Assembly: GCA_963924565.1 (NCBI GenBank)
Contig: OZ004611.1
Span: 29,574,001-29,638,000, forward strand
Reading direction: 5' to 3'
Source of the DNA: Ascidiella aspersa
Lineage: Eukaryota
DNA: 64,000 bases
Under the pieces are notes generated by a model. It made no database searches. It had not been told where the DNA came from and worked only from the letters and a program-made list of their open reading frames with translations. Made by a program: the position numbers and the translations under genes. The number at the start of each line of letters is the position of its first letter. Position 1 is the stretch's first letter. This document shows, in pieces, positions 6,390 to 12,820 of the stretch.

Positions 6390-6908
6390 GTTTTATATCT
6401 TACCTTTTTATTATTACATTACATACATTTTACTACTACATATTATTACATATTATTACATACGTCTCGCTCTTTCACAATTTTACTGTGCCACGACTAC
6501 TCGCAGACTTATATTTTACCTTTTTATTATCACATATTATTACATAAATTTTACTATTACATATTATTACACATTATTACATACGTCTCGCTCTTTTACA
6601 ATTTTACTGTGCCACGACTACTCGCAGACTTATATTTTACCTTTTTATTATTACATATTACTACAAACATTTTATTATTACATATTATTACATATTATTA
6701 CATACATTATATTATTACATATTATTACACATTATTACATACGTCTCGCCCTTCTACAATTTTACTGTGCCACGACTACTCGTAGACTTATATTTTACCT
6801 TTTTATTATCACATATTATTACATACATTTTACTATTACATACTATTACACATTATTACATACGTCTCGCTCTTTTACAATTTTACTGTGCCACGACTAT
6901 TCGCAGAC
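6390..6908 (+). repeat. AT-rich, G-poor tandem repeat (4 units of 121-158 bp, TATTACA-rich) just upstream of the ORF (also ~15653-16171)
   Basis: CGTCTCGC anchor at 6463, 6584, 6742, 6863. Confidence 0.88.
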
Positions 6909-6928
6909 TGTACACCGGTACCAACGTC

Positions 6929-9900: not shown

Positions 9901-11644
9901 GGTGGCCGAGGTTCTTGTTAGAGGGGTCAAAGCTCGCGCCGGTTGCGGATACAGATTCGATTGCGCTCCTAATGTCTTTTCCCAAGTGCTGGCATACGCT
10001 GACGACGGGTGTCTCATCTCGAGCTCGAGGTCACAGATGTGCGAGCAGCTGAAAGTGTGTGAGGACTTCGCCGGCTGGGCAGGTATCCGTTTTAACCCGA
10101 AAAAATGCCGCATAATGAACCAGGTGCTGGTTGGAAGTCGCCGACAACGGGATCCGCAGCCTTTCTCGCTCTCGGGCGAGGAGGTCAAGGTGATTGGTCT
10201 GGGCGAATTCTACCGCTACTTGGGAGTGCGGCAGGGATACCTTCCTGACACTCGATCGAACACCACCCTCGAGTTGTCTGCCGAGCGAATCAAGCGACTC
10301 TTTGAGTCGCCCCTCACGCCACACCAGAAGCTGCTGGCACTGAAGCGATTCGAGCTCCCCCGTCTGAGCTTCATCTTGAGGTTGCGGCATTTTCCGGTAA
10401 AGGAGTTGAGGAAGGTGGACTCTACGGTGCGGCGTTGCGTGCGCATTTCACTCCGCCTCCCAACACGAACGTGCGTGGCTTTTTACCACACGTCAGCAGA
10501 CAGCGGAGGCCTGGGGATCCCGTCGATCGCCGCCGAGGGCGACATACTGGCGGTGACACAGGCCTTCAAAATGCTGACAGCACCGGACTGGCGGGTGCGC
10601 GCCGTGGCCGTGGGTCGACTCGAATCTCTCTCGAAACGGATGGCCAAAGCTGAAAGTGTCGATGCCGGTGCGATGGCAGCTTTCATATCAGGGGGCAACG
10701 TCAGTGGTAACGGGTGCGGAGCGGGCGGAAGTCTGGAACGAGACTTGTTTACGTTTGTACGCAAGGCCTCGGAAAGGATCGATGTTCAATTCGTCGCGGG
10801 CGCTGACGGGCAGTTTTCTGTGACGTCTGGTGACAAGACGTTATCCCCCAGCAACCGGGCAGTATTTACCAGGACCCTCCACGCCTTACAATCAAAGCGT
10901 TGGAGGGAAGTGTGGGCCAGTCATCCAGACCAAGGTAAGACCGTAGGGGCCCACACCCAATACGGTTATTCGAACCACTGGTTGAAGAACCCCGGGGCTC
11001 TGACTATTCCAGAGCGCATTTTCGCGATGAAAGCACGCCTCAACCTCCTTCCTGTCAAGAAGGTTCGGGAACGATTTCACGGGGGACAGTCAGACGTTAG
11101 GTGCTGCAGATGCGGCAGTTCGGCCGAGACACTTCCCCACGTACTCAACCACTGTGTTCCCGTCATGCCCCAAATCCTATCTCGGCACGACGCCATACAG
11201 GGGGAAGTGTTGCGCCACGTACCTTCAGGGACCTTCACCAAGGTTTCTTGTGACCGAGTTTGCCGGGAGCACGCCGATGCCACGGGTGAGAACCTCCGGC
11301 CAGACTTGATTGTCGAGAGCGCCGACAGGTTCTTAGTCGTGGACTTTGCGTGCCCTTTCGAAAACGGCCAAGTTGCCCTTACCGCTGCTGCGGCCCGTAA
11401 GCACCAAAAGTACAGGGAGTTGTGTGGAAACTTGGCCCGTGTTTCCAAGAAGCGAGTCCTTTTCCACACCTTCATCATCGGCTCCCTGGGCAGCTATGCT
11501 CAAGGCAACAATTCCACCCTCAGCGCCTTGGGCATCACGGGCCGTCGTATGACGGAGGTAGCCAGAGCATGCTCAGCTCTGGCTATCAAGGGTAGCCACC
11601 ACGTGTGGCAATCTTGGTGCAGGGGGATTGTTACCAAACCTTAA
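6929..11644 (+). CDS. Retrotransposon protein (1571 aa from first ATG): 5 N-terminal zinc fingers, reverse transcriptase, CCHC knuckle, PD-(D/E)xK restriction-like endonuclease
   Basis: RT motifs NWRPISI, QKGF, WLDVKNAFGSI, GVRQGCPLS, YADD, FNPKKC, YRYLG; CRCGSSAETLPHVLNHC; RHD; RPDLIV..VVDFACPF..KHQKY. The track's 6767 start is a GTG inside the AT-rich repeat. Confidence 0.95.
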   Translation: MNVQPPRRRLRPAVRSRADQGTASSKPTKDAPSQEEAPPLSVTFRGPGDSVFRCGVSGCSMVSAALQSVKRHLASVHGLAVGVLDAACGKCSASFRSRGSLINVRDHYRACGAVAPAAAPRTPRAFCCPVCDSRWPSLVAAKSHHYQKHPGGPSRNNNSFVVAPGLLSPRRSIKQRPFTLNVRYVDAATTYKCPVPACPKGNDGYARVRTLKTHLSTCHKINNVLLRVVCGKCECVVADKAMSLLPASSHFKSCSGSGKPPSIPVPILPPSPANHSVGEDSDSSTVGKVPSLIFYQSKASINTTPPSDSEFLYGHVSPPSGSSHCSSVTLISPIATVAPVLSYADAVRTPSPKLSQIDLVTPPNLPTVGIQNSFSAECVDPYQPSEVSSVINATSPSGPPSFTLLRSWLNTPCTGSTRRVPVEIPQISPSRLARLAVTIRDHYRSRVNVATGVSPDPKPPKASVFLSGETPGREVVKVKEGPPVQGGWTDRPTQQLLVSNLLSAGELDQATSPPEVVEPCVAEATVAGAGEVSAAGNCPSPEPVPGAPERPAVKTRCEWEALLPSSPPVSDQVPVPVVGDVSHRSPVASSENASSSLPVRCNVNDPPLTDPSNDDLRARLAHVIDAHSSPDSFGELEHALEEWTKLAGSVDITRKQRKPRYNRGAQHRATTNRERGHPNKTTIPVKGAAAKGQCLRSAFWRDQRATVRRITDGLKGEVKCGIAPRVIEEKFRADLKAPGAYEHLEPVPSWMRATTGGGDASSGASGGVDSAPISPREVEMVLQSVNTASAAGSDGLSYGFWKALDPRGIVLAELFERCRIARRIPAQWRKSKVTLICKDPGGDLDDVSNWRPISICRNLYKLYAAVLARRLQRWALDGGVISPEQKGFMPVEGTFEHVFVLDSAWVDARQAKKDIFVAWLDVKNAFGSIRHDCIRSIMDELQVPDYLIECVADIYVGNTCVVRTAGGVTNEIPVGRGVRQGCPLSGLVFNLVAEVLVRGVKARAGCGYRFDCAPNVFSQVLAYADDGCLISSSRSQMCEQLKVCEDFAGWAGIRFNPKKCRIMNQVLVGSRRQRDPQPFSLSGEEVKVIGLGEFYRYLGVRQGYLPDTRSNTTLELSAERIKRLFESPLTPHQKLLALKRFELPRLSFILRLRHFPVKELRKVDSTVRRCVRISLRLPTRTCVAFYHTSADSGGLGIPSIAAEGDILAVTQAFKMLTAPDWRVRAVAVGRLESLSKRMAKAESVDAGAMAAFISGGNVSGNGCGAGGSLERDLFTFVRKASERIDVQFVAGADGQFSVTSGDKTLSPSNRAVFTRTLHALQSKRWREVWASHPDQGKTVGAHTQYGYSNHWLKNPGALTIPERIFAMKARLNLLPVKKVRERFHGGQSDVRCCRCGSSAETLPHVLNHCVPVMPQILSRHDAIQGEVLRHVPSGTFTKVSCDRVCREHADATGENLRPDLIVESADRFLVVDFACPFENGQVALTAAAARKHQKYRELCGNLARVSKKRVLFHTFIIGSLGSYAQGNNSTLSALGITGRRMTEVARACSALAIKGSHHVWQSWCRGIVTKP

Positions 11645-12820
11645 ACCATCCTTTGCAAGCGCAGACTGGCACCACACAAACACAAACCGGACGATCACGG
11701 CGGCGGGGCATCAACTTAACCGCAAATAAACCAGCTCACCAGTACGTTCATCAATCAGCCAACAACCCAGCCCACTCACCACCCCATCACCTCGGAAAAC
11801 TTCAGCCCTTTGACCCCAGCTCTATCCACGCCCCGCCGCCAACCCCTCCTCGCACTCCAATGTTAAAGCTGGCCTCCTCCAATCAAAACCCACTCCTGAT
11901 AGTTTCGCCGAGGTGCTCCCAACTCTTCAACCGCGCGGCAGCCGGGGACCAACTCTCCAAACACTTTAACGTTCCAACGTTCGTCTATCGTCCCCGGCCA
12001 ACACCTTCAACAGTTCCGCCCGCCACACCAGTCGAATCATCGTCAACGGCAAAAGGGCGGATGCCGCGCGGTCAACACCTCACCTCTTCACACCAATGGG
12101 GCCGGCTAGGAAGCCTGCCCCCGAACTGTCTGGCACCAACACTGGAGCACCTCGGCCCCCCAACCCACACGGAGGCCAGCAGGCCGGCGCACGTCGCCGA
12201 CCCACTAATTCGCACCATCCCCACCCGGTTTGCACAACACTTAGCTTTTAAATCTTTTTTTTTGTCTTAGGTAGCTCGTTTTTACACTTACTAGCAATTA
12301 AAGCACTTACCGCACTTAAACCTCTTTCAAGTTTTAAATGCACCCCCCTTTTTTTATATATATGCAAAGTTCCGAACTATTTTTTATATTTACATTGTTT
12401 TTAAATATTTTTATACCCACACCCCGTGTACTTTTTTCGCCACCCTCACCCCTTTCCACTCACTAGGCACACTTCCAAAATATGTATCTAAATTACACAA
12501 TACCATACCCGAGCCCAGTCTGCGCCAGTCCCTCTGTTCCTCCTGCGACGTCTCCTGCAAGCCCTACCATCGGCAGGCCCCACAATTCACTTAGCTTATA
12601 ACTTAACTAATCTGGCCCTAACTTTTTTAAATTTACCTTTTTTTCCACAGTAATCATCAATCTTAACCAAACCAAACCCACAAATTCTATCACCCATCGC
12701 CGTTACGGCGGTGGAGGCCGAGCGTGCAACGCACAATACTTATTGCCGGCGAAGCCTGTTTATATTGTCGTTTTCGTGTTTTATCGCCGTCAACACAATA
12801 AACCGGTGTACAGTCAAAAG

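What the first reader, a model, noticed from the sequence alone, without database searches (positions are those of the whole stretch)
6906..12815. Last 14 nt of the element are complementary to the 14 nt just before its start codon (panhandle)
Seen: GACTGTACACCGGT (6906-6919, ending 9 nt before ATG) is the exact reverse complement of ACCGGTGTACAGTC (12802-12815), which sits between AATAAA and the terminal AAAAG. Same in copy 3 (16169-16182 / 22090-22103), copy 1's 3' end, and the diverged fragment (30343-30356), while the adjacent base varies. Inference: a long-range RNA pairing closing a ~5.9-kb loop around the ORF, which could couple translation to full-length 3' ends or switch the RNA between translation and TPRT template use. 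I know of no description of this for R2-group elements.
Basis: partly seen in the sequence, partly recalled or inferred. Interest (0 to 1): 0.85.

Follow-up and report, generated by a model that had tools for sequence, protein, structure and literature searches.

The report
Retrotransposon RNA pairs start with tail
A jumping gene that lives inside U2 snRNA genes of a probable sea squirt carries several conserved sequence blocks around its start codon that exactly complement blocks in its tail, so its RNA probably closes into a loop around the gene, a trick known from some RNA viruses and yeast Ty1 that I found no report of for this class of element.

Summary
GACTGTACACCGGT (6906-6919) and its exact reverse complement (12802-12815) occur in every copy in the window: 6 sites against 0.18 expected.

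One correction. The element does not start at 6906. It starts about 2.2 kb upstream, at U2 position about 22 (window about 4728-4733). The 5' arm is therefore internal, 9 nt before the ATG.

The 14-mer is the outermost of at least four nested antiparallel helices between the start-codon region and the last 285 nt:
- 6951-6962 with 12748-12759
- 6986-6993 with 12550-12557
- 7025-7036 with 12537-12548

A dead copy of a diverged subfamily on another contig (about 70-78% identical) keeps both 14-mers unchanged amid diverged flanks. It has even longer helices.

Support for selection:
- Arms are conserved far above background (Fisher 8e-5 and 3e-8).
- Third codon positions in the arms are identical at 16 of 16 sites, against a background of 0.61.
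- Minimum-energy folds of the 5.9-kb and 8.1-kb RNAs keep all four helices.
- A 28S-inserted relative in the same genome shows nothing comparable.

The weakness is that there are no compensatory double changes, and no other species or RNA data could be reached.

Best reading: a selected RNA cyclisation. Its function is inferred only. An earlier scan note (s1-788252) reported the same feature on another copy.

The parts
4728..12820 (+). Full-length copy 2 of the U2-gene-specific RLE non-LTR retrotransposon (Utopia/YURE-like). The 5' junction is somewhere in 4728-4733, after U2 nt 1 to about 22 (4711-4732). The 3' junction is 12820|12821.
   Evidence: Copy 3 (13974-22108, including the U2 start) is 99.4% identical over 8.1 kb.
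4733..6928 (+). 2.2-kb leader without any ATG (23 expected). It lies outside the loop closed by the pairing.
6906..6919 (+). 5' arm of helix 1 (14 nt), ending 9 nt before the ATG.
   Evidence: Unchanged in the C1 subfamily copy.
6929..11644 (+). Single ORF of 1571 aa: N-terminal zinc fingers, RT, CCHC motif and PD-(D/E)xK-type endonuclease motifs.
6951..6962 (+). 5' arm of helix 2 (12 bp including one G-U; 11 nt exact), codons 8-12.
   Evidence: Third codon positions conserved.
6986..6993 (+). 5' arm of helix 2b (8 bp).
   Evidence: Two wobble-compatible changes in C1.
7025..7036 (+). 5' arm of helix 3 (12 nt exact).
12537..12548 (+). 3' arm of helix 3.
   Evidence: Conserved block in the 3' UTR alignment.
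12550..12557 (+). 3' arm of helix 2b.
12748..12759 (+). 3' arm of helix 2.
   Evidence: Identical in the C1 and L033 lineages.
12797..12802 (+). AATAAA poly(A) signal. Its last A is the first base of the 3' arm of helix 1.
12802..12815 (+). 3' arm of helix 1 (14 nt), 5 nt from the element's end.
   Evidence: Identical in C1 and L033, and 13 of 14 in an old L034 copy.
16169..16182 (+). Copy 3, 5' arm of helix 1. Its other 5' arms start at 16214, 16249 and 16288.
22090..22103 (+). Copy 3, 3' arm of helix 1. Its other 3' arms start at 21824, 21837 and 22036.
1153..1166 (+). Copy 1 (5' part outside the window), 3' arm of helix 1. Its other 3' arms start at 887, 900 and 1099.
30343..30356 (+). Truncated, about 7% diverged 5' fragment (28957-30591), 5' arm of helix 1. 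Its other 5' arms start at 30388, 30426 and 30472, all unchanged.

Best explanation
The 14-nt complement is the outermost helix of a selected long-range RNA-RNA interaction, a cyclisation, in the sense RNA of a U2-gene-specific Utopia/YURE-like retrotransposon. At least four nested helices (14, 12, 8 and 12 bp) join the region from -23 to +108 around the start codon to the last 285 nt of the 3' UTR. They close the 4.7-kb ORF and most of the 3' UTR into a loop and leave the AUG in a 31-nt internal loop between two strong helices. The 2.2-kb ATG-free leader stays outside the loop.

Shown here: the complementarity, its statistical excess, its conservation beyond coding need, and its thermodynamic plausibility.

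Inferred: three of the four 5' arms lie in the first 36 codons, so translating ribosomes must melt them. The 3' arm of helix 1 lies 5 nt from the template end where TPRT starts. The paired and open forms should therefore be mutually exclusive states, one for translation and one for template use.

By analogy with R2, a 3' RNA licenses first-strand cleavage and TPRT, and a 5' RNA at the ORF start licenses second-strand cleavage only after reverse transcription has unfolded the 3' RNA (bioRxiv 10.1101/2023.04.07.536001). Here base pairing could hard-wire that order: copying the tail would release the start-codon region.
For: - Exact 14-mer in all copies: 6 sites against 0.18 expected.
- The three longest exact complementary blocks between the whole element and its 351-nt tail cluster in 131 nt at the start codon and are nested. 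In shuffles the longest block reached 14 in 1 of 500 and 12 in 8 of 500.
- Cofolding 221 nt of the 5' region with 351 nt of the tail gains -56 kcal/mol over the separate folds, in both the main family and the C1 subfamily. In an ensemble of larger fragments (601 + 521 nt) pair probabilities are 0.95-0.99.
- The whole-RNA minimum-energy folds of 5,941 nt and 8,110 nt keep all four helices.
- The diverged C1 copy keeps both 14-mers unchanged, while the sequence upstream of the 5' arm is unalignable and the 3' UTR is about 69% identical. It adds helices of 9 and 12-13 bp.
- 3' arms are conserved at 35 of 37 positions against 183 of 279 elsewhere, P = 8e-5.
- 5' arms are conserved at 59 of 63 positions against 131 of 220, P = 3e-8.
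- Third codon positions in the arms are identical at 16 of 16 sites against about 0.61 background.
- Two 3'-side transitions in helix 2b switch G-C and G-U and keep pairing, which fits RNA of this strand.
- An old 5'-truncated tail outside U2 has 3 of 14 changes in the arm.
- Negative control: a complete 28S-inserted RLE element of the same genome has a longest block of 10 nt, within the shuffle range.
Against: - No compensatory double change was seen; the strongest helices are simply invariant, so pairing is not separated from sequence-specific recognition.
- Only two lineages, from one genome, have both ends. One of them is a dead copy with a stop at aa 224.
- Three single changes weaken in the main family the helix that is 13 bp in C1, and four pairs of a weak 4-bp main-family helix are lost in C1.
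- Helix 3 has pair probability 0 in the C1 ensemble.
- Total duplex energy does not single out the start-codon window among GC-rich ORF windows; only the exact-block statistics do.
- No RNA data: the transcript's ends, and whether both arms sit on one RNA, are inferred from the ATG-free leader and the AATAAA.
- Minimum-energy folds of long RNAs are unreliable.
Confidence: 0.6

Rival explanations
1. The blocks are conserved because a protein, the element's own or a host one, reads their sequence, not because the two ends pair. For example, the RT could recognise the tail blocks in the RNA and the identical sequence again in the first-strand cDNA, where the complement of the 5' arms reads the same as the 3' arms. 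Alternatively a DNA-binding factor could bind the same site in opposite orientation at both places.
For: Both 14-mers and helix 2 are invariant in lineages that differ by 25-30% elsewhere, with no covariation. The 14-mer is built of two palindromic hexamers, which is typical of dimeric binding sites. The 3' arm abuts the site where TPRT must start.
Against: At least three different blocks occur in mirrored order and inverted orientation, which a helix explains in one step and a motif model does not. Conservation at the 5' arm stops exactly where complementarity stops. G-C to G-U switches keep pairing in helix 2b. C1 has different, longer complementary stretches at the same place.
Confidence: 0.15
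2. It is a relic of an old inverted duplication, for example a template switch or snap-back during reverse transcription that copied the ORF start in reverse into the 3' UTR. Each arm is now kept for unrelated reasons (coding at the 5' side, 3'-end function in the tail) and no pairing has any role.
For: The nested antiparallel order is what an inverted duplication gives. The C1 copy has a nearly continuous 33-bp complement, as if less decayed. The main family carries three uncompensated disruptions of that helix.
Against: Third codon positions in the arms are conserved at 16 of 16 sites, so coding alone does not explain the 5' side. The first 5' arm is non-coding and sits between unalignable and diverged flanks. 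The spacers between blocks differ in length (32 against 43 nt, 62 against 199 nt) and contain no exact complementary block of 9 nt or more in register. Arms are far more conserved than the rest of both regions.
Confidence: 0.12
3. The pairing acts between molecules or on the DNA or cDNA strand. The palindromic hexamers or the two arms could join two RNA copies, as retroviral dimerisation sites do, or the first-strand cDNA could form the panhandle.
For: ACCGGT and TGTACA are self-complementary. Watson-Crick complementarity is the same on the opposite strand and in trans.
Against: G-U pairs in helices 2 and 2b and in the C1 9-bp helix would be C-A mismatches on the opposite strand. No packaging step is known for TPRT elements, from general knowledge. 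Nothing in the data requires action in trans.
Confidence: 0.08
4. It is a chance complementarity carried along in a young, nearly identical family.
For: Copies 1-3 are 97-99% identical, so their agreement counts as one observation.
Against: Shuffle and block statistics. Conservation in the diverged C1, L033 and L034 lineages.
Confidence: 0.02

Closest known systems
Ty1 CYC5/CYC3 cyclisation (yeast LTR retrotransposon)
   Same: Short complementary sequences, one inside the first ORF near the 5' end and one near the 3' end of the genomic RNA, are listed as cis-acting cyclisation sites required for reverse transcription (PMC7969010). From memory, Cristofari et al. 2002 (EMBO J) give their length as 14 nt. 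That paper was not read here.
   Different: Ty1 is tRNA-primed and replicates in virus-like particles. This element uses target-primed reverse transcription from the RNA 3' end, has several nested helices bracketing the AUG, and leaves a 2.2-kb leader outside the loop.
Flavivirus genome cyclisation (5'-3' UAR, DAR and CS elements)
   Same: From established knowledge: several separate complementary blocks, one upstream of the AUG and others in the first codons, pair with the 3' terminal region. The paired and linear forms are thought to switch between translation and template use.
   Different: Those are RNA-dependent RNA replication of a virus, and there the 5' arms are close to the true 5' end. 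No homology is implied.
R2 5' RNA and 3' RNA regulatory elements
   Same: R2 is the same broad class: a site-specific non-LTR element with a single ORF and an RLE. Its functional RNA elements sit at the same two places, the ORF start and the 3' UTR, and they order first-strand cleavage with TPRT before second-strand cleavage (bioRxiv 10.1101/2023.04.07.536001).
   Different: In R2 the two RNAs bind the protein separately, and no pairing between them is described. Nothing in this element matches any Rfam family except the U2 flank. The 28S-inserted RLE element of this genome lacks such complementarity.
Utopia / YURE elements (Kojima and Jurka 2015, PMC4640811)
   Same: The host element inserts at the same U2 site, has an RLE-type single ORF, and has sea-squirt relatives (YURE). 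The 5' junctions are variable, with loss of U2 sequence.
   Different: The paper does not mention complementarity between the UTRs or any RNA structure. Here the specificity for U2 genes is strict, within a U2-U1-U6 tandem array.

Membership tests
Utopia/YURE clade of RLE non-LTR retrotransposons (the element that carries the feature) | Reverse transcriptase domain | tested here: met
   Pfam RVT_1, E = 8e-31, residues 847-1082.
Utopia/YURE clade of RLE non-LTR retrotransposons (the element that carries the feature) | CCHC motif and PD-(D/E)xK restriction-like endonuclease after the RT, and no APE domain | tested here: met
   Invariant C1392, C1395, H1404, C1409, P1458-D1459 and K1491/K1494 in an alignment with 14 relatives. 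No Pfam endonuclease model hit.
Utopia/YURE clade of RLE non-LTR retrotransposons (the element that carries the feature) | Insertion at the specific U2 snRNA site, with the downstream flank starting at TCTGTTCTT (U2 nt 39 in the paper's numbering) | tested here: met
   The junction ...GTCAAAAG|TCTGTTCTT is seen in three window copies and in the C1, L033 and L034 copies. The site is as described in PMC4640811.
Utopia/YURE clade of RLE non-LTR retrotransposons (the element that carries the feature) | RT phylogeny places it within Utopia/YURE | not tested
   The closest proteins are unnamed RT proteins of Clavelina lepadiformis at 46-48% identity. No tree was built and no named Utopia/YURE sequence was available.
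RNA genome cyclisation elements (Ty1 CYC, flavivirus CS/UAR type) | Complementary sequences near the start of the first ORF and near the 3' end of the same RNA | tested here: met
RNA genome cyclisation elements (Ty1 CYC, flavivirus CS/UAR type) | Conservation of complementarity across diverged lineages | tested here: met
   Seen in the main family and the C1 subfamily, and for the 3' arms also in L033 and L034. All lineages are from one genome.
RNA genome cyclisation elements (Ty1 CYC, flavivirus CS/UAR type) | Compensatory (covarying) changes in the two arms | tested here: inconclusive
   0 double changes, 3 one-sided wobble-compatible, 52 unchanged, 5 broken and 3 gaps among 63 pairs.
RNA genome cyclisation elements (Ty1 CYC, flavivirus CS/UAR type) | Physical pairing, and a requirement of that pairing for reverse transcription or replication | not testable with these tools
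   This needs structure probing and mutants.
Terminal panhandle in the strict sense (both arms at the RNA termini, as in influenza or bunyavirus segments) | The 5' arm lies at the 5' terminus of the RNA or element | tested here: not met
   The 5' arm lies about 2.17 kb inside the element, and the leader is shared by all copies and is free of ATG. Whether a shorter RNA starts near 6906 could not be tested.
R2 regulatory RNAs | Match to a described R2 or ribozyme RNA family | tested here: not met
   Searching 4600-12900 against Rfam at E up to 1 found only the U2 flank.

The most novel reading that the evidence does not exclude
A target-primed (non-LTR) retrotransposon uses virus-like RNA cyclisation. 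Helices that bracket its start codon pair with the last nucleotides of the template. The same RNA then toggles between a translated open form and a closed form that presents a duplex with a 5-nt 3' overhang to the reverse transcriptase. Copying the tail would release the ORF-start RNA to trigger second-strand cleavage. This would be a base-paired version of the R2 5'-RNA/3'-RNA relay.
Probability: 0.3. Interest if true: 0.8.

Novelty: new variant of a known kind. Interest (0 to 1): 0.62.

Why it matters
How non-LTR retrotransposon RNAs are chosen as templates is still debated. So is how translation, first-strand synthesis and second-strand cleavage are ordered on one RNA. In R2 that order is set by two separate RNA elements that bind the protein.

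A natural element in which those same two regions are complementary would give a simple, testable RNA switch. It would extend 5'-3' cyclisation, known from flaviviruses, retroviruses and Ty1, to target-primed elements.

It could also guide the design of template RNAs for R2-type gene-insertion tools. The element is intact and young (99.4% identical copies with open ORFs), so it is experimentally tractable.

Tried and rejected
- Metagenome and viral scans. The metagenome scan gave 80 loci and the viral scan gave 1. None had a U2 junction. The nearest ones were truncated or broken.
Transcript ends are therefore unknown.
- More tails in this genome.
- Total duplex energy as a statistic. It beats shuffles (z = -2.9 and -6.3), but it does not single out the start-codon window among GC-rich ORF windows. 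I rely on the exact-block statistics instead.
- The 9-nt complement 6902-6910 with 12516-12524. Rejected as part of the panhandle. It overlaps helix 1 and is not kept in C1. Its 3' partner pairs better with 11659-11669.
- SL trans-splicing at the AG just before the 14-mer. The AG is absent in C1, so this was dropped.
- Leader helix covariation in the fragment. The downstream arms are deleted there.
- Supplements of the Utopia paper. They hold 3' ends only, with no 5' regions.
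Full report
**What is at the coordinates.** GACTGTACACCGGT is at 6906-6919, and its exact reverse complement ACCGGTGTACAGTC is at 12802-12815. A search allowing two mismatches finds six sites in the window, all exact. Three are on the + strand (6906, 16169, 30343) and three are the complement (1153, 12802, 22090). The expectation is 0.18, and none of 100 shuffles reached six. The 5' arm ends 9 nt before ATG 6929. 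The 3' arm starts with the last A of AATAAA (12797-12802) and is followed by AAAAG and then U2 sequence.

**What the element is, and where it starts.** Rfam finds a tandem array of U2, U1 and U6 genes. Aligning intact U2 genes with the three 3' junctions shows the insertion ...GTCAAAAG|TCTGTTCTT. This is the U2 site described for Utopia elements (PMC4640811).

The U2 5' end (nt 1 to about 22) lies at 4711-4732, and the sequence diverges from U2 after that. Copy 3 matches copy 2 at 99.4% over the whole 8.1 kb from 4711 to 12820. The fragment at 28957-30591 carries the same U2 start, leader, 14-mer and ORF start. The element is therefore about 8.09 kb. It does not start at 6906, and the 5' arm lies about 2.17 kb inside it.

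The leader has no ATG in 2,218 nt, where 23 are expected. This suggests that it is part of the translated RNA.

The ORF (6929-11644, 1571 aa) has an RVT_1 domain. In an alignment with 14 relatives it shows invariant CCHC and PD-(D/E)xK-type motifs. The closest proteins are from the ascidian Clavelina lepadiformis at 46-48% identity, so the host is probably a tunicate. The known tunicate relatives of Utopia are the YURE families.

**The 14-mer is part of a larger set.** Between 6800-7200 and the 3' UTR there are exact complementary blocks of 14, 12 and 11 nt: 6906-6919 with 12802-12815, 7025-7036 with 12537-12548, and 6952-6962 with 12748-12758. In 500 dinucleotide shuffles the longest block reached 14 once and 12 eight times.

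Across the entire element against its last 351 nt, only five exact blocks of 10 nt or more exist. The three longest all fall within 131 nt at the start codon, in nested antiparallel order.

Cofolding the two regions, with local structures allowed to compete, keeps these helices and adds 6986-6993 with 12550-12557. The gain is -56 kcal/mol, and pair probabilities are 0.95-0.99. The minimum-energy fold of the whole 5,941-nt stretch keeps the 14-, 12- and 12-bp helices. The fold of the full 8,110-nt element keeps those and the 8-bp helix as well. The AUG sits in a 31-nt internal loop between helix 1 and helix 2.

**Conservation.** A copy of a diverged subfamily lies on another contig (locus L035, called C1 here). 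It is about 70-78% identical, has internal deletions, and has a stop at aa 224.
- Its 5' 14-mer is unchanged and sits 1 nt before the ATG, while the sequence upstream cannot be aligned.
- Its 3' 14-mer and AATAAA are unchanged in a 3' UTR that is about 69% identical.
- Two further 5'-truncated lineages keep the 3' arm, one at 14 of 14 and one at 13 of 14 (L033 and L034).
- An old tail outside U2 has 3 of 14 changes.

In the 3' UTR, positions in the exact blocks are conserved at 35 of 37 against 183 of 279 elsewhere (P = 8e-5). On the 5' side, arms are conserved at 59 of 63 against 131 of 220 (P = 3e-8). Third codon positions inside the arms are identical at 16 of 16 sites, against 0.61 in the RT region and 0.62 in the rest of the ORF start. 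Protein coding alone therefore does not explain the conservation.

C1 has additional helices of 9 and 12-13 bp, so 33 bp are nearly continuous there.

**What the comparison does not show.** Mapping the 63 main-family pairs onto C1 gives 52 unchanged, 3 one-sided wobble-compatible, 0 compensatory, 5 broken and 3 gapped. Two of the wobble-compatible changes are G-C/G-U switches in helix 2b.
- The strongest helices are invariant, which argues for constraint but cannot separate pairing from recognition of the sequence itself.
- Three single changes interrupt in the main family the helix that is 13 bp in C1.
- Helix 3 is not favoured in the C1 ensemble.
- Total duplex energy is not a useful statistic here. 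It beats shuffles, but GC-rich ORF windows score as well or better.

**Control.** A complete RLE element inserted in the 28S gene of the same genome (L046, with L045 as a related copy; LSU rRNA flanks confirmed) was put through the same procedure. Its longest complementary block between the start-codon region and the tail is 10 nt, inside the shuffle range. The feature is therefore not a general property of such elements or of this genome's composition.

**Interpretation.** The best reading is a selected long-range RNA pairing that closes the ORF and most of the 3' UTR into a loop (confidence about 0.6). Several different blocks in mirrored order, conservation limits that coincide with the limits of complementarity, and G-U-compatible changes all favour a helix. 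They weigh against a repeated protein-binding motif, against a neutral relic of an inverted duplication, and against a role on the opposite strand. Those rivals are not excluded.

The function is inferred. Three of the four 5' arms lie in the first 36 codons, so ribosomes must open them. The outer 3' arm lies 5 nt from the template end, where TPRT begins. Translation and template use should therefore exclude each other.

In R2, a 3' RNA promotes first-strand cleavage and TPRT and blocks second-strand cleavage. A 5' RNA at the ORF start activates second-strand cleavage once reverse transcription has unfolded the 3' RNA. Here pairing between the same two regions could enforce that order directly.

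**Comparison with what is known.**
- 5'-3' cyclisation is established for Ty1 (CYC5/CYC3; PMC7969010).
- From general knowledge it is also established for flaviviruses and HIV-1.
- The Utopia paper does not mention UTR complementarity or RNA structure.
- Full-text searches combining non-LTR retrotransposons with panhandle, cyclisation or RNA circularisation returned nothing relevant. The library is incomplete, so this absence is not proof.
- No Rfam family matches within the element.
I re-derived the blocks independently.

**Limits.** The metagenome and viral scans gave no usable relative.

Noticed in passing
window 4818-4893 and 5987-6055: The leader has its own long-range inverted repeat of three nested blocks: 16 nt at 94%, 14 nt exact and 15 nt exact, about 45 bp in all. 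It closes the 1.1-kb tandem-repeat region. The 8.1-kb minimum-energy fold keeps it.
   Followed up: partly
window 11659-11669 and 12515-12525: An 11-nt exact complement starts 15 nt after the stop codon and pairs with a conserved 3' UTR block, closing an 850-nt domain. Both arms are also present, 818 nt apart, in the L033 lineage. Two old L034 copies each carry one disrupting change.
   Followed up: partly
window 4711-6928: There is no ATG in the 2,218-nt leader, where 23 are expected. The diverged C1 copy has 651 ATG-free nt before its start codon.
   Followed up: yes
window 1134-4350 and 12783-13613: U2, U1 and U6 (opposite strand) genes are packed in a 1193-bp tandem unit. Three of the five U2 genes that Rfam finds in the window are interrupted by the element.
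   Followed up: partly
window 8441-8585 and 10802-11094, against L035 2246-2390 and 4377-4669: These segments are 89% identical between the two subfamilies, against about 75-78% elsewhere, with third-position identity of 0.94 and 0.83. This suggests recombination between subfamilies, or further constrained RNA structure inside the ORF.
   Followed up: no
window 11605-12270: A 221-aa open frame (GTG start) overlaps the ORF end and runs into the 3' UTR. It has no Pfam match and is mostly deleted or diverged in C1.
   Followed up: partly
window 12783-12820: Rfam's U2 model aligns the element's last 38 nt to U2 positions 1-40. TTTATCGC is shared at nearly the same distance from the junction, but not at that distance in the C1 or L033 lineages.
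   Followed up: partly
L028 1420-1570 and L029 1430-1570 (G000 contig C2, about 37.89 and 37.94 Mb): An old 5'-truncated tail of a related element sits outside any U2 gene and is duplicated with its flanks. Its 3' arm reads ACCCGTGTAGAGTT.
   Followed up: partly
L045 and L046 (G000 contig C5, about 8.60 and 10.28 Mb): RLE-type elements with ORFs of 854 and 1016 aa, 32% identical in the RT, are inserted in 28S rRNA genes away from the snRNA array.
   Followed up: partly
window 6391-6909: The leader ends in about five tandem units of roughly 120-160 bp, each ending ...CGCAGACTT. The last unit runs into the 14-mer, so GACT of the 5' arm belongs to the repeat unit.
   Followed up: no
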